Positions 1 to 43,400 of a stretch of DNA of 64,000 nucleotides are shown here, in pieces (the first letter of the stretch is position 1; each line of letters begins with the position of its first letter). Both the position numbers and the translations under genes were made by a program. The DNA lies in contig NW_027266264.1 of assembly GCF_022045235.1 (NCBI RefSeq), positions 30,070,001 through 30,134,000 of the forward strand, written 5' to 3'. The DNA is from Haliotis cracherodii (lineage: Eukaryota). The notes under the pieces were generated by a model. It ran no database searches, had not been told where the DNA came from, and saw nothing but the letters and a program-made list of their open reading frames with translations.

Positions 1-54
1 TCCCTCGGACTAAATAAAAATGGTCAAATCTAAAGGAACAGGAAACATTGCTAC

Positions 55-175
55 CTGATGAGCTCAAATATATCAGGCTTGTTTTTCTCCCGTATCTTCA
101 TCCGTTCCCGCATAGCCATGATGATGTTGTGCGTCTTGTCCTCCGCTCCGTGCTTGGAGCTCTTCTCGGCCGCCC
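55..175 (-). CDS. unc-13: unc-13 exon after C1 ([41 protein letters not shown])
   Basis: Acceptor tttcag, donor AG|gtagca, 121 nt, phase 1 to 2. Matches the conserved Munc13 C1-C2B linker [14 protein letters not shown]. Confidence 0.96.
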
Positions 176-282
176 CTGAAAGATGACAGTACAGCAGTCC
201 CATACACCATCCCATTCACTTACTTGCACCAAATGTGAGGAAGATATCTCATTAGTTTCTTTATTTTACATGAATCAACCAG

Positions 283-1967: not shown

Positions 1968-1989
1968 GAGTTACATGAAAAGGACTTAC

Positions 1990-2209
1990 TTTGCAGACAG
2001 TCAGCATTGAGCAAGTCTTTGCATTTCTCGTGACATTTGACCCCGCACTCGGTGCACCTCACCCCTTGGCGTGCAAGTCCCCACAGCAGACCTTCACACT
2101 CAAAACAGTATGTCGGTGATGTTGCAGTCCACACAACAAAGTTGTGCGGTGTTGTACTGGAGATGGGGTAAATGAGGGCCTGGAGGGTTTTCTTGTAAAC
2201 ATGCATCTT
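1990..2209 (-). CDS. unc-13: unc-13 C1 (DAG/phorbol ester-binding) domain exon
   Basis: [73 protein letters not shown] is the Munc13 C1 domain. ttacag acceptor, gtaagt donor, 220 nt, phase 0 to 1. Confidence 0.98.
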
Positions 2210-16067: not shown

Positions 16068-16158
16068 CAAGTCACTGACTAGAGGAATGGACTTGCGGCG
16101 AGGCTTAATCTCCGGCATGCTGTCTATGCTGGTGTAGAATGGGTTGTGTTCTGGGGGG
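16068..16158 (-). CDS. unc-13: unc-13 exon PPEHNPFYTSIDSMPEIKPRRKSIPLVSDL
   Basis: tttcag acceptor, TTG|gtgagt donor, 91 nt, phase 2 to 0. Contains the conserved IDSMP..RRKSIPLVS.L motif. Confidence 0.95.
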
Positions 16159-16689: not shown

Positions 16690-16775
16690 CCTCCATTTGC
16701 ATGGTGTGACCAGGAGTATTTGTTGCGATAGTCATCATCACCGTACTCGCCATCGCCCCCCATCAGTGATCCACT
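16690..16775 (-). CDS. unc-13: unc-13 exon SGSLMGGDGEYGDDDYRNKYSWSHHANG, probable first common exon of all isoforms
   Basis: tttcag acceptor, GG|gtaagc donor, 86 nt, phase 0 to 2. Bridges exactly the phase-0 upstream donors and the phase-2 exon at 16158. Confidence 0.85.
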
Positions 16776-19719: not shown

Positions 19720-20187
19720 CTCAACACTATATGCTGCTTCTCGAGACCAAATCCGATGACCTTTTGCATGCTGACACACAGCAACTGTCTTGGTCCTCAT
19801 GAGACGCAACTGAACCGAAGTGTCTGAAGAGTAGCTGGTGGAGTCCTCTGTGTGGGGGACACCTATGTCCTGGCTGCTGGAGCAGCTTCTGCTCGCTGTC
19901 CCATCATCCGTGGAGGACGGAGTCGCCACCTCCTCCTCAATGGCATCACGGTCATCAAGTTTCCTCTTCTGCCACGATGGCCGTGCATGTCGACTAAATG
20001 TTCGTCTCCATGTCTTGGCTTCAAATCTGGCTGAATTTTGCCTGTAAAGATCAAGGCTGGCTGGTCTGCAGGTAAGGTCTTCTTCTTCGACAACATATAC
20101 CCAATCCCCCTCAGTCTTGCTCATCATGGTCGACATACTGCTCTCAGCAGGGTGTATCCTATCCATCATGGCGCCCATGCTGACCAT
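19720..20187 (-). CDS. unc-13: candidate alternative N-terminal coding exon of unc-13 (156 codons, MVSMGAMMDR...AAYSVE)
   Basis: Non-repetitive ORF with an in-frame upstream stop at 20251-20253. Ends at GAG|gtaaga in phase 0, compatible with the acceptor at 16775. Confidence 0.65.
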
Positions 20188-20999
20188 GAATAACTGGCGG
20201 TGAATATCAGCAGCTGTTAGAGATAGCCAAGAGCCATGTTTTATTCGAAGTCACTTGTACAATATGGACTTAGTCTTCGACCTAATGGAGGAAACCCTTG
20301 ATTACATTTTTCTACGTCTTGATCCCTTCAAATAGACACTGGAAAATCTGCTTGCCCTTTAGCCTTGAGGATGTTCCAGATGTTCTGTCTAGGTAACTAT
20401 GATCATGTTCTAAACACACATCATCCTCAGGGTACTTCTTTCAGGTGAATATATCCCAAATGACGGTATCCAGGATTATTCCAAAATTCAGCTATGACAA
20501 GAACAGCAGGAAATCTTTATCAAAACCAAAAGTCTTCCGTTTAAAACAATGGCTGCCTACAATTAGCTCTGCTGTTAACCATCTGAATTACTGACAGTTT
20601 GTGTGATGCAGGGAATATGCTATCATGCATTAATTACTGTCACTTGTATAGCAAGAAAATAACTGTTTGTGACAGATAATCATGCTGTAATTATGAACAG
20701 TGTAATTATGACACAAACATTATTCTGTCTTGTCTGCTCACATTGCTGTGTGTGCCAGGATGAAAGGTCCACTGGTGTGACGATGTATCATGAAGATGAA
20801 CATCAAAACTGTGTGAACATTAGACTACAGGCTGTGTTCAGTAGGACCTTTACGACAGGCTGTGTTCAGTAGGACCTTGATGGTAGGTGTTCAGTAGGAC
20901 CTTGATGGTAAAACTACTTTTAATTGCAAACACAGGCTGTTCAGTATAACCCTGTTGATGGGGGTTGGGGGTGGTGCAATTTGCGTCAACAGCATACAC

Positions 21000-28669: not shown

Positions 28670-29480
28670 TGGGAGATATAGGGTGGAAATAGGGTGGGGT
28701 TATAGGGTGGGGAGAGATTGGGATGGATGGGGAGATATAGGGTGGGGACATTGGGTGGAGATATTGGGTGGAGATATGGGTCGTGGAGATATAAGGTGGG
28801 GAGAGGCTGTGATGGGTGGGAATATAGGGGTGGGGAGAGATTGGGATGGGTGGGGAGATATAGGTTGGGGATATTGGGTGGAGATATGGGGTGGCGAGAT
28901 ATTGGAATGGGTGAGCATAAAAGGGAGGGGAGAGTTTGAGATAGGTGGGGATATATAGGGTCGGGATTCTGGGTGTAGATATGGGGTGGGAAGATATAGG
29001 GTGGGGAGAGATTGGGATTGGTGGGGATATAGGGTGGGGAGAGATTGGGATGGGTGGTGATAAGGGGAGATAAAGTTAGTGAGTGAGTATGGTTTTACGC
29101 CACTTTTAGCAATATTCCAGCATACTTCCTAGTGGTTGACACCGGAAACTGGCTTCACTCATTGTACACAAGTGGGAAATCGAACTCAGGTGGGGAAATG
29201 GGGGTGGGGGGATATAGGGGTGGGGGGATATAGGGTGGGGAGATATTGGGTGGGGATATAGGGTGGGGAGATATAGGGTGGGGAAATAGGGGTGGGGGGA
29301 TATAGGGTGGGGATATAGGCTGGGCAGATATAGGGTGGGCAGATATAGTGTGGGGAGATATTGGGTGGGGATATAGGGTGGGGAGATATAGGGTGGGGAC
29401 AGATTGGGATAAGGGGAGGACATAGGGATGGTGAGAAATAGGGTGGGCAGATATAGGATGGGGAGATATAGTAATGTGGA
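28670..29480. repeat. G-rich ~15-bp satellite with an embedded family B SINE fragment (29078-29188)
   Basis: Unit ggggagatatagggt. Internal gagtgagtatggttttacgccacttttagcaatattccagc. Confidence 0.85.
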
Positions 29481-30103
29481 GAGATATCCTTTCAGAGTAC
29501 TTAACAAAAATTCTACCATGAATTTGTAATTTACTCGATTCTGATTGGTCAACCAGAGGCTATTAAATCACAATAAATCCCCTCTGATTGAAACAGCTGG
29601 TTTGACAGCCGCATCACTGCGGAAGCGTACATTCATAGAACAGTACTATTTTCAGTCATTGTCGGTAGGCATATTTGAATAATTATATCTGCAATTACAG
29701 GTTACAAAATGCACAGATGCGGTTATTACAATATTCTAAGGATGTGTGGCAATACATTTCGTACAGAAAACATGATAGAAATCAACAAAGAGAATGTATT
29801 TACGTTTTAGAGACAACAGAGAGTTGGGAATTTTGGCACTTTTCTACATACGACTGTGACGTCATATCTTTTGCGTCACAAGGAGTGCTATGACGTCATA
29901 ATGGTGACGCACGATGTAGAGCGAAAGCCTTGCAAAGCTTGCTTTGTTTTCTTTAGGGATGCCCACCTCATGTTAGCTTACCAAGTGGCCGCGCTTATTT
30001 AATTTAGCGCGGTTAGATCTACAGGTAACCTAGTTCTACATTGAAAACACAGTATGTTTATCTCCTAATTTTAAGGGTCAGTCATACATAATGTATATAT
30101 GTG

Positions 30104-30904
30104 TATGGGCGGCCATTCGGTAAAAAAATACAAAGTTGAAAAAAACATATTACGAATAAAGAACTAAATGTTACTACTAAAGGTCAAAATACAATATCAA
30201 TAGTCAAACGTTACGAAAAGATGTCATAAGAAAAGAAAGAACAATTTTTACAAAAGAACATCAGTGAGCACGAAAGGACGATTTCAATAAAGAACGTCAG
30301 TGAGCACGAAAGGACGTTTTCAATAAAGAACGTCAGTGAGAACGAAAGGACATTGACACTAAAGAACGTCAGTTAGCACGAAAGGACGTTGACAATGAAG
30401 AACGCCAGATGGCGCTGCAATTTGTAAAACATTCCGAGTTTAATCGACTTGTTCTGCCGTGTATATGATAACTGCTTGCCGAGGTGCACAATGTATCACT
30501 TCATTCCTCGTGCACTCACCGTCTGACGTCACACATATAAATGTGGATGTAAACAAGCGAAATAAATATGGTTTGAAAACGAACTCTGGCGTCATAGATG
30601 AAGCTCGATTTTCTTATTTATGGCGAGCTATTTTTCCTAACGAATGTGTAAGTTATACATATGCATACAAATCCATTTGGTTTATATATTTGTTCCCTGT
30701 CCTTTCGTGGTCACTGACGTTCTTTCGTACACATTGTTCTTACTTTTCTTATGATGTCTTTTCATAACATTTGACTATCAATATTGTATTTTGACCTTTA
30801 GTACTAGTAGTAACATTTAGTTCTTTATTCGTAATATTTGACCTTAATTGCGTACTTTTGTCCCTTTTTTTAACTTAAATTTTTTGACCGAATGGCCGCC
30901 CATA
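30104..30904. mobile_element. MITE with ~180-200 bp TIRs, TAT..ATA termini and 6-bp TSD (IS3EU-like)
   Basis: tatgggcggccattcggt ... accgaatggccgcccata. tatgtg is duplicated at 30098-30103 and 30905-30910. Internal ~30-bp subterminal repeats. Confidence 0.88.
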
Positions 30905-31238
30905 TATGTGTTCAAGAAAGATAAAAATATTCAAACCTGAGCTGCCACAACCAGTTTGTGTGGTTAAAACCCTGCTCTGACATAAAGATCAAGTGTGGTT
31001 AAAATGGTGACATAAACAGCTGGTATGGTTAAAATCCTGCCGTGATATAAAAATCAGGTGTGGTTCAAACCCTACCTTGACATGTACTACCTATGTACCT
31101 GTTCCATCTACCAGATCTGTGAGCTTAAGACCAACCCCTAGTTAGTCAGTTTCCCGAAGGTAACCATCAGTAGATGAATGTCATCCAATAACCATACAGC
31201 AACCCCTTACACACAACATAAATACACTGTACTGATAC

Positions 31239-31634
31239 CTGTAACTTCTGAGGCCCATTGACTTCCTGCAGGAAGCCCTGATTATATAAGTCACATTCGG
31301 GGTCACTGTCGTGTTCACTGTCGTGTTCACCTGTCCCTCCAGCCGCCCCTTCGTCAACATCTTCCAACTCCCACGACCTGTCATCATTCGCAGACATTGT
31401 TTGGTCAACACTTAACTCAGTTGCTTGTTTTTCAATACGAATCCGCCAGAGTTCCTGCAGAAACAATGGCAAAACGTCCAGAAATGTGCGCTCTTCTTGT
31501 GACTTGTGTTTGAAACTAACGCAATGACTGACCACCTCCGCTGAGTCAGTTGTCACAGACGCATCCCTGTCTTCATCAGTTTCACAGTTTGACTTGTCAC
31601 TTTCTGCAACAATCTTAGCTATCAAACTTCCCAT
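31239..31634 (-). CDS. unc-13: candidate alternative N-terminal coding exon of unc-13 (132 codons, MGSLIAK...GPQKLQ)
   Basis: Kozak context aacaagATGG, acidic non-repetitive ORF, CAG|gtatca phase-0 donor compatible with the acceptor at 16775. Confidence 0.6.
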
Positions 31635-32269
31635 CTTGTTGCTAGGATACCAGTTTGGGTTAGAATTTGTTGCAAAAATAACTTTGTTATTCCTGTAGTG
31701 TTTAGTTGTGGGTCATCGAACAATCTGTTCTTTCACATACGTAGTAGATATTGATAAGCACACAGGTAGTAGATATCATATGTTTGTCAGAACTCACACA
31801 TATGTATCTGTGCTAGGTATCGTAGGTGTTGTCTCCAGCATGATAGTGCTGACTCTTCCCTTGATGAACATTATGTTGTCACTAGCCACTACCATGAGTG
31901 TTCATAGAAAACACACATGTAGTCATTTCTGGGTTACTAAACGCTGAAGAATGCTGACATCATGTCTGCCTGTCTCCACAGGATCTTACTTTGGAGGGAT
32001 TATATCAGATTATATGGCAGATGGCAGTCAATACTTTAAGTTGCATTTGGTTTTCAGTAGTTCTAACCATGTGCTGTAAAGTTCCCCATGAAGTGTTGTG
32101 CCAATGGTTCTGCAGCAACTACTAATACCATCCACATACTCTGCTGTCTACACCGCCTTGATATAACACTGTGTCACCCCCATATTGTGATGTCAACACA
32201 TTCTTTAACAGTGTCCCAATTTTTTGTAAATAAATATTGTGATGCTCTTTGATCTGCTGTTAACACAAG

Positions 32270-33440
32270 TACCCATTTTTCTGCATTCAACACTGTTGCC
32301 CAATGCTCTGCTGTCAACAATGGTGCCCAATGCTCTGCTCTCAACACAGTTTCCCAATGCTCTGCTGTCAACACTGGTGCCCAAAGTCCTGCTTTCAACA
32401 CTGTTGCCCAATGTCCTGCTGTCAACAATGGTGCCTAATGTCCTGCTGTCTGTACTGGTGCCCAATGTCCTGCTTTTAACACTGTTGCCCAATGCTCTGC
32501 TGTCAACAATGGTGCCCAATTTCCTGCTGTCAACATAGTGACCCAATATCCTGCTGTCAACACAGTTGCCCAATGTCCTTCTGTCAACAGTTACCCAATG
32601 TTCTGCTGTCAACACAGTTGCCAAATGTCCTGCTGTCAACACTAGTGCCCGGTGTCCTGCTGTCAACACAGTTACCCAAAGCTCTGCTGTCAACACTGGT
32701 GCCCATTGTCCTGCTGTCAACACTGGTGCCCAATGTTCTCCTGTCAACACAGTTACCAAATGTTCTTCTGTCAACACAGTTGCCCAATGTTCTTCTGTCA
32801 ACACAGTTGCCCAATGTTCTTCTGTAAACAGTTGCCCAATGTTCTCCTGTAAACACAGTTGTCCTATGCACTGCTGTCAACACTGGTGCCCAAAGTTCTT
32901 CTGTCAACACAGTTGCCCAATGTCCTGATGTCAGCACTGGTGCCCAATGTCCTGCTGTCAACACCGTTGCCAAATGTCCTGATGTCAACACTGGTGCCCA
33001 ATATTCTCCTGCCAACACAGTTACCAAATGGTCTTCTGTCAACACAGTTGCCCAATGTTCTGTCAACAGCTGCCCAATGTCCTGCTGTGAACAGTTGCCA
33101 AATGTTCTCCTGTCAACACAGTTGCCCTATGCTCTGCTGTCAACACTGGTGCCCAAAGTTCTTCTGACAACACAGTCACTCAATGTTCTTCTGCCAACAC
33201 TGTTACCCAATGTCCTGCTGTCAACAGTTGCCCAATGTTCTTTTTCAACACAGTTGCCCAATGTCCTGCTGTCAACACAGTCCCCCAATGTTCTTTTGCC
33301 CACACAGTTACCCAATGTCCTGCTGTCAACAGTTGCTCAATGTTCTTCCGTCAACACAGTTGCCCAATGTTCTTCTGTCAACACAGTTACCCAATATTCT
33401 GCCAATCCTTTGTCCCCAAATGTCCTGCCGTCAATGCTGT
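32270..33440. repeat. 27-bp minisatellite
   Basis: Unit ctgctgtcaacacagttgcccaatgtc. Confidence 0.92.
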
Positions 33441-34889: not shown

Positions 34890-35725
34890 GGACTGTTCTC
34901 CAAGATGACTGCTGAGACTGTTCTCCTAGATGACTGCTGAGACTGTTCTCCTAGATGACTGCTGAGACTGTTCTCCTAGATGACTGCTGAGACTGTTCTC
35001 CAAGATGACTGCTGAGACTGTTCTCCTAGATGACTGCTGAGACTGTTCTCGAATATAACTGCTGAGACTATTCTCCAAGATGACTACTGAGACTGTTCTC
35101 CTAGATGACTGCTGAGACTGTTCTCCAAGATGGCTGCTGAGACTGTTCTCCTAGATGACTGCTGAGACTGTTCTCCAAGATGGCTGCTGAGACTGTTCTC
35201 CAAGATGACTGCTGAGACTGTTCTCCAAGATGGCTGCTGAGACTGTTCTCCTAGATGACTGCTGAGACTGTTCTCCAAGATGACTGCTGAGACTGTTCTC
35301 CAAGATGACTGCTGAGACTGTTCTCCTAGATGACTGCTGAGACTTTTCTCTAAGATGACTGCTAAGACTGTTCTCCTAGATGACTGCTGAGACTGTTCTC
35401 CTAGATGACTACTGAGGCTGTTCTCCTAGATGACTGTTAAGACTGTTCTCCTAGATGACTGCTGAGACTGTTCTCCTAGATGACTGCTGAGACTGTTCTC
35501 TAAGATGACTACTGAGACTGTTCTCCAAGATGACTTCTGAGACTGTTCTCTTAGATGACTGCTGAGACTGTTCTCTAAGATGACTGCTGAGACTGTTCTC
35601 CTAGATGACTGCTGAGACTGTTCTCCTAGATGACTACTGAGACTGTTCTCCTAGATGACTGCTGAGACTGTTCTCCAAGATGACTGCTGAGACTGTTCTC
35701 CAAGATGACTGCTGGGACTGTTCTC
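34890..35725. repeat. 25-bp minisatellite
   Basis: Unit gactgttctcctagatgactgctga. Confidence 0.96.
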
Positions 35726-36006
35726 CTCAAAGGTGACTGTTGAGGCAGACTGAATCTCTGACTCATCGTGACAATAACATGCTCTGATTCATGAAAATTA
35801 TATATGCAGAAATTCTGCAAACAGAAGGGTTTCTGTGACATGGAGAACTACAATAATATTTGAGTGAACATATTAAACCAAGACCCTGCTATGACCACTA
35901 TTTAAATGCAACATGTATGATGGAGGTAGCAGAATAAAAGATATCCATGGAGGTAATGATTAACATTACACAAAATGGGGAGGACAATGGCAAAATGAAC
36001 AGGGAA

Positions 36007-37819: not shown

Positions 37820-40800
37820 GATGGTAGTGTTCTGATGTATGTGATATCGCTCAATGGTAGAGTTCGGATGTAAGTGATATCACTCAATGGTAGCGTTCTG
37901 ATGTAAGTGATATCACTCAAAAGTAGAGTTCGGATGTAAGTGATATCACTCAATGGTAGCGTTCTGATGTGAGTGATATCACTCAACGGTAGAGTTCGGA
38001 TGTAAGTGATATCACTCAATGGTAGAGTTCTGATGTAAGTGATATCACTCAATGGTAGCGTTCTGATGTAAGTGATATCACTCAATGGTAGAGTTCTGAT
38101 GTAAGTGATATCACTCAGTGGTAGAGTTCGGATGTAAGTGATATCACTCAATGGTAGCGTTCTGATGTAAGTGATATCACTCAATGGTAGAGTTCTGATG
38201 TAAGTGATAGTAGTATGGTTGAGTTGTGATGTAAGTTATATATGTAGAATGGTCGAGTTCTGATATAAGAGATATCACTCAGAAGTATGGTAGAGTTTTG
38301 ATCTTTGTAAAATCACTCAATGGTAGAGTTCTGATGTAAGTGATAACAGTAGTACGGTAGAGTTCTGATGTAAGTGATAACAGTAGTACAGTAGAGTTCT
38401 GATGTAAGTGATAACAGTAGTACAGTAGAGTTCTGATGTAAGTGATAATAATAGTACAGTAGAGTTCTGATGTACGTGATAACAGTAGTACGGTAGAGTT
38501 CTGATGTAAGTGATAATAGTAGTACAGTAGAGTTCTGATGTAAGTGATAATAGTAGTACGGTAGAGTTCTGATGTAAGTGATAACAGTAGTACAGTAGAG
38601 TTCTGATGTAAGTGATAATAGTAGTACGGTAGAGTTCTGATGTAAGTGATAACAGTAGTACAGTAGAGTTCTGATGTAAGTGATAATAGTAGTACAGTAG
38701 AGTTCTGATGTAAGTGATAATAATAGTACAGTAGAGTTCTGATGTACGTGATAACAGTAGTACGGTAGAGTTCTGATGTAAGTGATAATAGTAGTACAGT
38801 AGAGTTCTGATGTAAGTGATAATAGTAGTACGGTAGAGTTCTGATGTAAGTGATAACAGTAGTACAGTAGAGTTCTGATGTAAGTGATAATAGTAGTACG
38901 GCAGAGTTCTGATGTAAGTGATAACAGTAGTACAGTAGAGTTCTGATGTAAGTGATAATAGTAGTACGGTAGAGTTCTGATGTAAGTGATAATAGTAGTA
39001 CGGTAAAGTTCTGATGTAAGTGATAACAGTAGTACAGTAGAGTTCTGATGTAAGTGATATCACTCAATGGTAGAGTTCTGATGTACGTGATAACAGTAGT
39101 ACCGTAGAGTTCTGATGTAAGTGATAACAGTAGTACGGTAGAGTTCTGATGTAAGTGATAATAGTAGTATGGTAGAGTTCTGATGTAAGTGATAACAGTA
39201 GTACAGTAGAGTTCTGATGTAAGTGATAATAGTAGTACGGTAGAGTTCTGATGTAAGTGATAATAGTAGTACGGTAGAGTTCTGATGTAAGTGATAATAA
39301 TAGTACAGTAGAGTTCTGATGTAAGTGATAACAGTAGTACGGTAGAGTTCTGATGTAAGTGATAACAGTAGTACGGTAGAGTTCTGATGTAAGTGATAAT
39401 AATAGTACAGTAGAGTTCTGATGTACGTGATAACAGTAGTACAGTAGAGTTCTGATGTAAGTGATAACAGTAGTACGGTAGAGTTCTGATGTAAGTGATA
39501 ATAATAGTACAGTAGAGTTCTGATGTAAGTGATAACAGTAGTACAGTAGAGTTCTGATGTAAGTGATAATAGTAGTACGGTAGAGTTCTGATGTAAGTGA
39601 TAACAGTAGTACAGTAGAGTTCTGATGTAAGTGATAATAGTAGTACGGTAGAGTTCTGATGTAAGTGATAATAGTAGTACAGTAGAGTTCTGATGTAAGT
39701 GATAACAGTAGTACAGTAGAGTTCTGATGTAAGTGATAATAGTAGTACGGTAGAGTTCTGATGTAAGTGATAACAGTAGTACAGTAGAGTTCTGATGTAA
39801 GTGATAATAGTAGAACGGTAGAGTTCTGATGTAAGTGATAACAGTAGTATGGTAGTGTTCTGATGTAAGTGATAATAGTAGTATGGTAGAGTTCTGATGT
39901 AAGTGATAATAGTAGTACGGTAGAGTTCTGATGTAAGTGATAATAGTAGTACGGTAGAGTTCTGATGTAAGTGATAACAGTAGTACAGTAGAGTTCTGAT
40001 GTAAGTGATAATAGTAGTACGGTAGAGTTCTGATGTAAGTGATAACAGTAGTACAGTAGAGTTCTGATGTAAGTGATAACAGTAGTACGGTAGAGTTCTG
40101 ATGTAAGTGATAATAGTAGTACGGTAGAGTTCTGATGTAAGTGATAATAGTAGTACGGTAGAGTTCTGATGTAAGTGATAATAATAGTACAGTAGAGTTC
40201 TGATGTAAGTGATAACAGTAGTACGGTAGAGTTCTGATGTAAGTGATAACAGTAGTACGGTAGAGTTCTGATGTAAGTGATAATAATAGTACAGTAGAGT
40301 TCTGATGTAAGTGCTATCAGTAGTATGGTAGAGTTCTGATGTAAGTGATATCACTGGTAGGGTAGAGTTCTGATGTAAGTGATAACAGTAGTACGGTAGA
40401 GTTCTGATGTAAGTGATAACAGTAGTACAGTAGAGTTCTGATGTAAGTGATAATAGTAGTACGGTAGAGTTCTGATGTAAGTGATAACAGTAGTACGGTA
40501 GAGTTCTGATGTAAGTGATAATAATAGTACAGTAGAGTTCTGATGTAAGTGCTATCAGTAGTATGGTAGAGTTCTGATGTAAGTGATATCACTGGTAGGG
40601 TAGAGTTCTGATGTAAGTGATATCACTCAATGGTAGAGTTCTGATGTACGTGATAACAGTAGTACAGTAGAGTTCTGATGTAAGTGATAACAGTAGTACG
40701 GTAGAGTTCTGATGTAAGTGATAATAGTAGTACGGTAGAGTTCTGATGTAAGTGATAATAATAGTACGGTAGAGTTCTGATGTAAGTGCTATCAGTAGTA

Positions 40801-41278: not shown

Positions 41279-41316
41279 CTGAAAAGACATGTCAGCACAA
41301 TGTGAGGACAAGATAC

Positions 41317-43400
41317 TGTAGGCTATTGTAGAGGTCATAACAACACAGTAGACTATTGTAGAGGCCAGAACAACACAGTAGACTATTGTAGAGGTCATAA
41401 CAACACAGTAGACTATTGTAGAGGCCATAACAACACAGTAGACTATTGTAGAGGCCATTACAACACAGTAGACCATTGTAGATGCCATAACAACACAGAA
41501 GACTATTGTAGAGGCCATAACAACACAGTAGACTATTGTAGAGACCATAACAAAACAGCAGACTATTGTAGAGGCCTCCATAACAACACAGTAGACTATT
41601 GTAGAGGCCATAACAACACAGTATACTATTGTAGAGGCCTCCATAACAACACATTAGGCTATTGTAGATGCCATAACAACACAGTATACTATTGTAGAGG
41701 CCATAACAACACAGTAGACTATTGTAGAGGCCATAACAACACAGCAGACTATTGTAGAGGCCTCCATAACAACACAGTAGACTATTGTAGAGGCCAGAAC
41801 AACACAGTAGACTATTGTAGAGGCCATAACAACACAGTAGACTATTGTAGAGGCCATAACAACACAGTAGACTATTGTAGAGGCCAGAACAACACAGTAG
41901 ATTATTGTAGATGCCATAACAACACAGTAGACTATTGTAGAGGCCATTACAACACAGTAGACTATTGTAGAGGCCAGAACAACACAGCAGACTATTGTAG
42001 AGGCCAGAACAACACAGTAGACTATTGTAGAGGCCATTACAACACAGTAGAGTATTGTAGAGGCCAGAACAACACAGTAGACTATTGTAGAGGCCAGAAC
42101 AACACAGTAGACTATTGTAGAGGCCAGAACAACACAGTAGACTATTGTAGATACCATAACAACACAGTAGACTATTGTAGAGGCCATAACAACACAGTAG
42201 ACTATTGTAGAGGCCAGAACAACACAGTAGACTATCGTAGATGCCATAACAACACAGTATACTGATGTAGAGGTCATACAAATGCAGTAGGTTATTGTAG
42301 AGGTCATACAAACACAGTAGGCTATTGTAGAGGCCATAACAACACAGTAGACTATTGTAGAGGTCATACAAACACAGCAGACTATTGTAGAGGCCCTAAC
42401 AACACAGCAGACTATTGTAGAGGCCAGAACAACACAGCAGACTATTGAAGTGGCCAGAACAACACAGCAGACTATTGTAGAGGCCATAACAACACAGTAG
42501 ACTATTGTAGAGGCCAGAACAACACAGAAGACTATTGTAGATGCCATAACAACATAGAAGACTATTGTACAGGCCATAACAACACAGTAGACTATTGAAG
42601 AGGCCATAACAACACATTAGGCTATTGTAGATGCCATAACAACACAGTAGACTATTGTAGAGGCCATAACAACACAGTAGACTATTGTAGAGGCCATAAC
42701 AACACAGCAGACTATTGTAGAGGCCAGAACAACACAGCAGACTATTGTAGAAGCCTCCATTACAACACAGCAGACTATCGTAGAGGCCATAACAACACAG
42801 CAGACTATTGTAGAGGCCAGAACAACACAGCAGACTATTGTAGAGGCCTCCATAACAACACAGAAGACTATCGTAGATGCTATAACAACACAGTAGACTA
42901 TTGTAGATGCCATAACAACACAGAAGACTATTGTAGAGGCCAGAACAACACAGTAGACTATTGTAGAGGCCATAACAACACAGTATACTATTGTAGAGGC
43001 CATAACAACACATTAGACTATTGTAGAGGCCAGAACAACACAACAGACTATTGTAGAGGCCATAACAACACAGTAGATTATTGTAAAGGCCATAACAACA
43101 CAGTAGACTATTGTAGAGGCCATAACAACACAGTAGACTATTGTAGATGCCATAACAACACATTAGGCTATTGTAGAGGCCCTAACAACACAGTAGACTA
43201 TTGTAGAGGCCATAACAACACAGTAGACTATTGGAGAGGCCTCCATAAGAACACAGCAGACTATTGTAGATGCCATAACAACACAGTAGACTATTGTAGA
43301 GGCCCTAACAACACAGAAGACTATTGTAGAGGCCATAACAACACAGTATACTATTGTAGAGGCCCTAACAACACTGTAGACAGTGTATAGGCAATAACAA
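41317..43400. repeat. 30-bp minisatellite, ~68 copies
   Basis: Unit gactattgtagaggccataacaacacagta. Confidence 0.97.

What the first reader, a model, noticed from the sequence alone, without database searches (positions are those of the whole stretch)
31239..31634. Candidate alternative Unc13 N-terminus starting with a myristoylation-like motif (MGSLIAK)
Seen: strong Kozak ATG, a 132-codon acidic ORF, and a phase-0 donor that fits the common exon at 16775, skipping C2A and the CaM helix. Known: Unc13 genes use alternative N-termini (Drosophila Unc13A/B, C. elegans long/short, ub/bMunc13-2), and N-myristoyltransferase needs Gly2 and favours a small residue at 6 and Lys at 7. Inference: a lipid-anchored, RIM-independent Unc13 isoform, which I do not know to be described.
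Basis: partly seen in the sequence, partly recalled or inferred. Interest (0 to 1): 0.75.

Follow-up and report, generated by a model that had tools for sequence, protein, structure and literature searches.

The report
Abalone-only extra front exon in Unc13

Summary
The locus is the Unc13 orthologue on the minus strand. New here: in 2 of 3 RNA-like contig sets laid, both from sister species, a contig stops fitting the genome exactly at the predicted donor, 31239. A DNA-like contig reads on into the intron. So the exon is real and its donor is used.

The exon is single-copy. Its only homologue found is a sister-species copy.

Not shown: the partner of the donor. Exon 16775 fits by phase only.

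Against the lipid-anchor idea:
- MGSLIAK fits the published NMT motif, but all three sister species laid, and P0001, have Asp at position 6, which breaks it.
- The substitution pattern looks neutral, 9 nonsynonymous to 2 synonymous.
- In one species the transcript carries 616 or more bases of leader with 19 upstream ATGs.

Verdict: a genus-restricted alternative 5' exon of a known kind. Myristoylation is possible in this species only and is unproven.

The parts
31632..31634 (-). ATG start codon of the candidate ORF, context AACAAGATGG
   Evidence: kept in the sister-species protein P0001
31239..31634 (-). 132-codon acidic ORF (MGSLIAK...PQKLQ). Predicted mostly disordered, with one helix at about residues 46-81
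   Evidence: single copy; 13 of 20000 shuffles; mean pLDDT 50.3
31237..31238 (-). GT of the phase-0 splice donor (CAG|GTATCA)
   Evidence: Laid parts of X3 record 24 and X4 record 31 end at 31239. X17 record 16 reads through
31635..32250 (-). Transcribed leader upstream of the ATG, collinear with the genome. Covered to 32250 and beyond in organism B and to 31904 in organism C. Holds 19 upstream ATGs, with an in-frame stop at 31715-31713
   Evidence: (records 24, 31, 32)
31303..31335 (.). 12-base tandem repeat inside the ORF (EHDS EHDS). The sister species have one unit fewer
   Evidence: 15 gap letters in records 16, 24 and 31
16690..16775 (-). Candidate common exon (SGSLMGGDGEYGDDDYRNKYSWSHHANG-). 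Only phase 0 is open and it ends with 2 bases of a codon. Proposed, not observed, partner of the 31239 donor
   Evidence: No protein evidence found
16068..16158 (-). Next exon (PPEHNPFYTSIDSMPEIKPRRKSIPLVSDL). It needs 2 bases from the exon before, matching exon 16775
   Evidence: Its likeness to Munc13-1 is recalled, not tested
19720..20213 (-). Other ORF-bearing exon candidate (ATG at 20187, phase-0 GTAAGA donor at 19720, possible acceptor AG at 20215-20214). Entered in phase 0 from 20213 it stops after 15 codons
   Evidence: One search found only the window's own ORF
1982..2209 (-). C1-domain exon that identifies the gene as Unc13
   Evidence: PF00130, 1.2e-14. (5ue8_A, Protein unc-13 homolog A, 1.7e-44)

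Best explanation
An alternative 5' exon of the abalone Unc13 gene sits in one of its long introns. It is at least 1 kb long (31239 to beyond 32250). It is transcribed in at least three Haliotis-like species and is spliced at the GT after 31239.

Its last 396 bases form an ATG-initiated, phase-0 ORF of 132 codons for a very acidic, mostly disordered peptide with one helix. The most likely partner is exon 16775-16690. The product would then be an Unc13 isoform in which the long N-terminal region is replaced by this young head, followed by the conserved PFY...RRKSIPLVSDL exon, C1, C2B, MUN and C2C. This would parallel worm UNC-13S, fly Unc13B and bMunc13-2.

Shown: the ORF, transcription, donor use, single copy, and restriction to close relatives. 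Inferred: the coding status, the partner exon, the start of translation, and any lipid anchor.

The head matches the NMT motif only in the window's species. A myristoyl anchor, if any, is therefore a species-level novelty and not the exon's conserved function.
For: - Gene identity: the C1 exon matches rat Munc13-1 at 1.7e-44. MUN exons lie at G000:C1:30035529-30057387 on the same strand. C2 exons lie at 30063480 and 30032576.
- Transcription and splicing: X3 record 24 (1139 bases) fits 31239-32250 and has letters left at both ends. X4 record 31 (471 bases) fits 31239-31700 with 18 letters left over. X1 record 8 (281 bases, 0 differences) lies inside the ORF. None of these three runs has depth at 30968-31153, whereas X17 record 16 fits 31098-31804 whole.
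- X3 and X4 are not whole-genome DNA: they hold 117 and 85 million contig letters against a 1182-million-base genome.
- 16 RNA-like runs of 4 organisms hold part of the exon.
- Coding: 13 of 20000 shuffles of the exon keep 132 or more open codons at the 3' end. P0001 keeps M1, G2 and the frame, with two in-frame indels.
- Phase: the donor is phase 0. Exon 16775 is open only in phase 0, and its end fits exon 16158-16068.
Against: - The junction partner was not seen. Loose-end letters at 31239 were among the 834 rows not printed.
- 'RNA' for X1, X3 and X4 is the tool's guess.
- No purifying selection is visible. In X3, 9 of the 11 listed ORF differences are nonsynonymous, giving dN/dS 1.13. The ratio is 0.88 in X4 and 1.01 in X17. 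Counts are small and shared among the three species, and 7 of X3 record 24's 34 differences were not listed.
- The ORF is no more conserved than its leader: 11 listed differences in 396 bases against 16 in 616.
- 19 upstream ATGs precede the start in the transcript form seen in organism B.
- The only protein found reads through the donor into the intron (P0001).
- No homologue was found outside close relatives.
- Another exon candidate at 20213-19720 lies between the donor and 16775. Entered in phase 0 it would stop after 15 codons.
Confidence: 0.5

Rival explanations
1. A non-coding or unproductive transcript. An intronic promoter gives a spliced RNA whose first exon happens to carry a young, neutrally drifting ORF. 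It joins either an out-of-frame Unc13 exon (for example the acceptor at 20214, giving a stop after 15 codons) or exons of its own. No Unc13 isoform is made.
For: - dN/dS is about 1.
- The ORF is no better conserved than the leader.
- The leader holds 19 upstream ATGs.
- No homologue was found beyond close relatives.
- The protein atlas sees no family-like features: recognition 1266, best score 0.75.
- The exon is seen in 16 RNA-like runs from 8 studies, which is broader than I would expect for a neuron-only isoform. The tissues are unknown.
Against: - An open tail of 132 or more codons occurs in only 13 of 20000 shuffles of this exon.
- ATG, Gly2 and the frame are kept, with 2 of 2 indels in frame.
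- The phase-0 donor fits the only open phase of exon 16775.
- With 11 changes, a moderate constraint cannot be excluded. This is my own arithmetic on the counts.
Confidence: 0.27
2. An internal cassette exon of the long Unc13 isoform and not a first exon. Upstream exons would splice into an acceptor in the 78 open bases before the ATG (for example AG at 31694-31693), and the contigs with the long leader would be intron-retaining forms.
For: - The frame is open for 26 codons upstream of the ATG.
- X4's coverage is broken into two contigs that overlap at 31676-31700.
- The leader looks intron-like, with 19 upstream ATGs.
Against: - X3's contig is collinear with the genome for 616 or more bases above the ATG, at the same contig depth as the ORF. 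The intron below the donor has no depth.
- No contig end falls at 31692.
- No joint was reported in that stretch among the 15 joint rows printed; 110 rows were hidden.
Confidence: 0.1
3. A stand-alone small protein of about 146-155 residues, translated from the unspliced RNA. The ORF runs through the donor to the stop at 31167.
For: The read-through ORF is 155 aa in the window. The only database protein, P0001 (146 aa), has the same read-through tail.
Against: - P0001 comes from a 1483-base contig of unknown kind. The contig that reads through is from the DNA-like run X17.
- The RNA-like contigs of X3 and X4 leave the genome at 31239.
- No family or fold was recognised.
Confidence: 0.05
4. A chance ORF with a chance GT in untranscribed intron.
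For: Shuffled windows give 1.8 open segments of 132 or more codons.
Against: Contigs from three RNA-like runs cover it, and two of them end at the predicted donor.
Confidence: 0.02

Closest known systems
C. elegans UNC-13S (short isoform) versus UNC-13L (Hu et al. 2013, PMC3743133; Zhou et al. 2013, PMC3821175). I saw the search listing and the start of the abstracts only
   Same: One unc-13 gene gives a long form and a short form with a different N-terminus and the same C1-C2B-MUN-C2C core. The abstract of PMC3821175 says the N-termini of the major isoforms contain a C2A domain. The abalone exon lies upstream of the C1 exon on the same strand and could feed the same core.
   Different: There is no sequence likeness to anything outside close relatives. 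The junction to the core was not seen. The exon evolves as if unconstrained.
Drosophila Unc13A and Unc13B N-terminal isoforms (review PMC8762327; listing and abstract start only)
   Same: Isoforms that differ in their N-terminal regions. That they place release sites differently is recalled from the field, not read here.
   Different: The fly isoforms are experimentally established. Here only the exon and its donor are supported.
N-myristoylated proteins fitting the NMT motif M-G-[^DEFRWY]-X-[^DEKR]-[ACGST]-[KR] (Castrec et al., as quoted in 10.1101/2020.08.25.266692; passages read)
   Same: MGSLIAK fits all positions. About 1 in 1030 random ATG starts would fit, and 3 of 1911 ATGs in the window do.
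   Different: Three of three sister species laid, and P0001, have Asp at position 6, which is outside [ACGST]. Translation from this ATG and the lipid itself are untested.

Membership tests
Unc13/Munc13 gene (identity of the locus) | Munc13-type C1 domain | tested here: met
   PF00130 at 1.2e-14. Best solved-structure match is 5ue8_A, Protein unc-13 homolog A, 1.7e-44, nearly identical over 76 residues
Unc13/Munc13 gene (identity of the locus) | MUN domain and C2 domains downstream on the same strand | tested here: met
   9 MUN (PF06292) exon matches at G000:C1:30035529-30057387, minus strand. C2 matches at 30063480-30063641 and 30032576-30032764
Unc13/Munc13 gene (identity of the locus) | N-terminal C2A domain in a long isoform, which the new exon would bypass | tested here: inconclusive
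   The genome-wide PF00168 search listed no match upstream of the window in this locus. I saw none among open segments of the window. C2A is divergent and split into exons, so absence is not shown
Alternative first coding exon of Unc13 | The exon is transcribed | tested here: met
   Contigs of X1, X3 and X4 cover it, and the adjacent intron has no depth. 'RNA' is the tool's guess. Their contig totals are a tenth or less of the genome
Alternative first coding exon of Unc13 | The donor at 31239 is used | tested here: met
   In 2 of 3 RNA-like runs a contig's fit ends exactly at 31239 (X3 record 24, X4 record 31). The DNA-like X17 reads through
Alternative first coding exon of Unc13 | Spliced in frame to a common Unc13 exon | tested here: inconclusive
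   Only phase logic is available. The letters beyond the donor were not printed, and one search found nothing
Alternative first coding exon of Unc13 | Own transcription start, with no exon spliced in from upstream | not testable with these tools
   Contigs cannot show a 5' end. The X3 contig is collinear for 616 or more bases upstream
Alternative first coding exon of Unc13 | The ORF is kept by selection | tested here: inconclusive
   The frame, ATG and Gly2 are kept and 2 of 2 indels are in frame. dN/dS is 0.88-1.26 on 9-12 changes, and 55% of random 12-change sets would leave no stop anyway
N-myristoylated protein (NMT substrate) | Gly at position 2 and a fit to M-G-[^DEFRWY]-X-[^DEKR]-[ACGST]-[KR] | tested here: met
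   MGSLIAK against the motif quoted. Chance fit is 1 in 1030
N-myristoylated protein (NMT substrate) | The motif is kept in relatives | tested here: not met
   Place 31618 G>T, giving Ala6 to Asp, in X3, X4 and X17. P0001 begins MGSLIDK
N-myristoylated protein (NMT substrate) | Translation starts at this ATG and myristate is attached | not testable with these tools
   Needs ribosome profiling, proteomics or click labelling. 19 upstream ATGs in the leader argue for caution

The most novel reading that the evidence does not exclude
In this one abalone species a single Asp-to-Ala (or retained Ala) change at residue 6 gives a young, alternative Unc13 head a complete N-myristoylation signal. The animal would then make a naturally lipid-anchored Unc13 isoform that lacks the long N-terminal region, while its sister species make the same isoform without the anchor. 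That would be a natural experiment on membrane tethering of a vesicle-priming factor.
Probability: 0.18. Interest if true: 0.6.

Novelty: new member of a known kind. Interest (0 to 1): 0.35.

Why it matters
Unc13 proteins set where and how fast synaptic vesicles become release-ready. In worms, flies and mammals, much of that tuning lies in alternative N-termini. A genus-restricted, fast-evolving extra 5' exon in a mollusc Unc13 would show that such heads can arise recently.

If the head is myristoylated in one species and not in its sisters, that would give a natural comparison of tethered and untethered forms. As it stands, the solid result is modest: a real, spliced, lineage-specific exon that annotation would probably miss. 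Its protein-level role is open.

Tried and rejected
- Homology: Pfam found nothing for the ORF. HMMER against 1.84 billion representatives found 1 protein, P0001. The word-indexed search of 5.8 billion clusters, limited to 73-231 aa, found the same 1 of 16 candidates. The ESM Atlas gave best score 0.75 and recognition 1266, so no lead.
- Gene model from proteins: the 19720-20187 exon returned only the window's own ORF, P0002. The open segment around exon 16775 (42 aa, so only 23-73 aa candidates) returned no candidate. Long annotated Unc13 isoforms could not be reached because of the length window. The 50%-cluster library may hide an isoform under another representative.
- Fold: AlphaFold2 on a 2-row alignment gave mean pLDDT 50.3, with helices at 4-14, 46-81 and 112-125. 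This was too weak for a fold search, so none was run. The 46-81 helix has K+R 4 and D+E 7, so I rejected the idea that it is a typical basic calmodulin-binding helix. That is inference.
- Repeat or mobile-element origin: rejected. ORF and leader are single-copy in G000.
- Record coordinates: I tried to read which end of records 24 and 31 hangs over the donor. The convention for minus-strand records is not stated, so the overhang is 28 or 108 letters (X3) and 18 or 0 letters (X4). I left this open.
- Literature on a natural lipidated Unc13: 'unc-13' + 'myristoylation' gave 21 papers, 15 listed. 'Munc13' + 'N-myristoylation' gave 10 papers. 'UNC-13S' + 'myristoyl' gave 0. I saw only titles and abstract starts, and none concerns a lipidated Unc13. 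I recall that artificially membrane-anchored UNC-13S was used in worm work; I did not find it here. (alternative first exon) and searches gave background only. Supplements were not opened.
- Earlier notes of this scan gave only first-reader notes for this window, and the label 'abalone' from other pieces of the genome. One search returned an error (word met in no finding).

Full report
**What is in the sequence.** On the minus strand an ATG at 31634 sits in the context AACAAGATGG. It opens 132 codons (MGSLIAK...NGPQKLQ) that end at 31239, directly before GTATCA. The peptide is very acidic, with D+E 31 and K+R 11. The stop-to-stop frame is 181 codons: 26 codons are open above the ATG and 23 run on into the intron. 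ORF length alone says little, because order-1 shuffles of the window give on average 1.8 open segments of 132 or more codons.

**Where it lies.** The window is G000:C1:30070001-30134000 of a 1.18-Gb genome. Earlier agents of this scan took the genome for an abalone; I did not test that. The ORF at 1940-2236 holds a C1 domain. It is nearly identical over 76 residues to rat Munc13-1 (5ue8_A, 1.7e-44). MUN-domain exons follow on the same strand at C1:30035529-30057387. C2 exons lie at 30063480 and 30032576. The finding therefore lies inside the Unc13 orthologue, upstream of its conserved core and on its coding strand. I did not locate a C2A exon, so 'skips C2A' rests on other animals.

**Is the exon real?** The look-up of sequencing runs listed 22 runs, of which 21 hold part of 31239-31720. 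Sixteen are guessed to be RNA (organisms A-D, 8 studies) and five are of unknown kind (organism E). None is on record as RNA.

I laid four runs on 29480-32250:
- X1 (organism A) has one 281-base contig at 31308-31588 with no difference. Organism A is therefore the window's species or very near it.
- X3 (organism B) record 24, 1139 bases, fits 31239-32250 and has unfitted letters at both ends.
- X4 (organism C) record 31, 471 bases, fits 31239-31700 with 18 letters left over. Record 32 carries on to 31904.
- X17 (organism E) record 16, 698 bases, fits 31098-31804 whole, so it reads straight through the donor.

X1, X3 and X4 have no depth at 30968-31153. X3 and X4 hold 117 and 85 million contig letters against a 1182-million-base genome, while X17 holds 610 million. 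I read X3 and X4 as transcriptomes and X17 as genomic DNA. Two contigs from two species that leave the genome at exactly the predicted GT, while DNA reads through, is what a used splice donor looks like.

**What I could not see.** The convention for minus-strand record coordinates is not stated, so the overhang at the donor is 28 or 108 letters in X3, and 18 or 0 in X4. The partner exon is therefore unknown.

**Sequence logic on the partner:**
- Exon 16775-16690 has a pyrimidine tract and AG in front and GTAAGC behind. It is open only in phase 0.
- It ends with two bases of a codon. The next exon, 16158-16068 (PPEHNPFYTSIDSMPEIKPRRKSIPLVSDL), needs exactly two bases.
- The phase-0 donor at 31239 would fit it. 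So would the phase-0 donor at 19720 of the other ORF-bearing exon.
- That other exon also has a possible acceptor at 20214. Entered in phase 0 there, the frame stops after 15 codons.
- Protein searches meant to show spliced neighbours gave nothing useful.

**Is it coding?**

For:
- Given that the exon is real, only 13 of 20000 dinucleotide shuffles of its 1012 bases leave 132 or more open codons at the 3' end.
- The one homologue, P0001 (146 aa, 92% identical, from a 1483-base Logan contig), keeps Met1, Gly2 and the frame. Its two indels are both in frame: one extra Asp and one EHDS unit fewer.

Against:
- Of the 11 differences listed inside the ORF for X3, 9 change the residue and 2 do not. 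This gives dN/dS 1.13. The ratio is 0.88 for X4 and 1.01 for X17.
- Most of these changes are shared by the three species, so this is essentially one comparison. In addition, 7 of the 34 differences of X3 record 24, 5 of 15 of X4 record 31, and 7 of 22 of X17 record 16 were not listed.
- Listed differences are as dense in the ORF (11 in 396 bases) as in the leader (16 in 616).
- A set of 12 random changes would leave the frame open 55% of the time, so an intact frame is weak evidence at this distance.
- The two silent changes both fall in the stretch 47-81, which P0001 keeps unchanged. That stretch has 2 silent and 1 replacing change against 0 and 8 elsewhere (Fisher p 0.055). This hints at constraint on the one predicted helix.
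- AlphaFold2 gives mean pLDDT 50.3, with a helix at 46-81.
- No family, fold or atlas cluster is recognised.
- ORF and leader are single-copy.

I conclude that a fast-evolving, mostly disordered coding head is more likely than a non-coding exon, but not by a wide margin.

**Start of translation.** The X3 contig is collinear with the genome for at least 616 bases above the ATG, and X4 for 270. That leader holds 19 ATGs with short ORFs of 1-33 codons, and an in-frame stop 26 codons above the start. The good Kozak context is real. 'First AUG' does not hold for the transcript form seen, and contigs cannot show where transcripts begin.

**The lipid anchor.** The NMT recognition motif of Castrec et al. 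is M-G-[^DEFRWY]-X-[^DEKR]-[ACGST]-[KR], as quoted in passages of 10.1101/2020.08.25.266692. MGSLIAK fits it fully. About 1 in 1030 random ATG starts would fit, and 3 of 1911 ATGs in the window do. But place 31618 reads T instead of G in X3, X4 and X17, which turns Ala6 into Asp, and P0001 begins MGSLIDK. Asp is outside the allowed set. The signal is therefore complete only in the window's species. Without an outgroup I cannot say whether it was gained there or lost in the others. A myristoyl anchor cannot be the conserved purpose of this exon. It remains possible as a species-level novelty.

**Comparison with what is known.** Alternative N-termini on a common C1-C2B-MUN-C2C core are the rule in this family: worm UNC-13L and UNC-13S (PMC3743133, PMC3821175; listing and abstract starts only) and fly Unc13A and Unc13B (PMC8762327; listing only). 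The mammalian ub/bMunc13-2 pair is recalled, not checked. If the junction holds, the abalone exon is a further, very young example. My searches for a naturally lipidated Unc13 found none in titles or abstract starts. I did not read those papers, and the library lacks most subscription journals.

**Verdict.** This is a real, genus-restricted alternative 5' exon of Unc13 whose in-frame link to the core is plausible but unseen. Its myristoylation signal is not conserved. I class it as a new member of a known kind, of modest interest.

Noticed in passing
window 19720-20213 (minus strand): A second ORF-bearing exon candidate (ATG at 20187, 156 codons, strong phase-0 GTAAGA donor at 19720). It also fits the phase of exon 16775 and carries a basic stretch, RFEAKTWRRTFSRHARPSWQKRKL. 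The protein search returned only the window's own ORF.
   Followed up: partly
window 29480-30900: Stretch with very high summed contig depth in all four runs (up to 25000 in X17), many 'opposite strands' joints and hundreds of partial contigs. It is probably a family of short inverted-repeat mobile elements in the intron below the exon.
   Followed up: no
window 32253-33434 and 34891-35727: Two long tandem arrays just upstream of the exon's leader: 27-base unit x 43 and 25-base unit x 33.5. The window holds many more arrays, for example 38279-40354 and 41292-43163.
   Followed up: no
window 31303-31335: The ORF contains a 12-base tandem duplication (EHDS EHDS). The sister species carry it once, and they have one extra Asp codon near residue 94.
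   Followed up: yes
G000:C56:20879001-20891053: A second set of MUN-domain exons on another contig, plus strand (6 matches). It is presumably a paralogue of the Munc13-4, BAIAP3 or CAPS kind.
   Followed up: no
window 16068-16158 and 54-215 (minus strand): Exons that read PPEHNPFYTSIDSMPEIKPRRKSIPLVSDL and ...[40 protein letters not shown]. They look like the conserved Unc13 stretches before and after C1. The likeness to Munc13-1 is recalled, not tested.
   Followed up: partly
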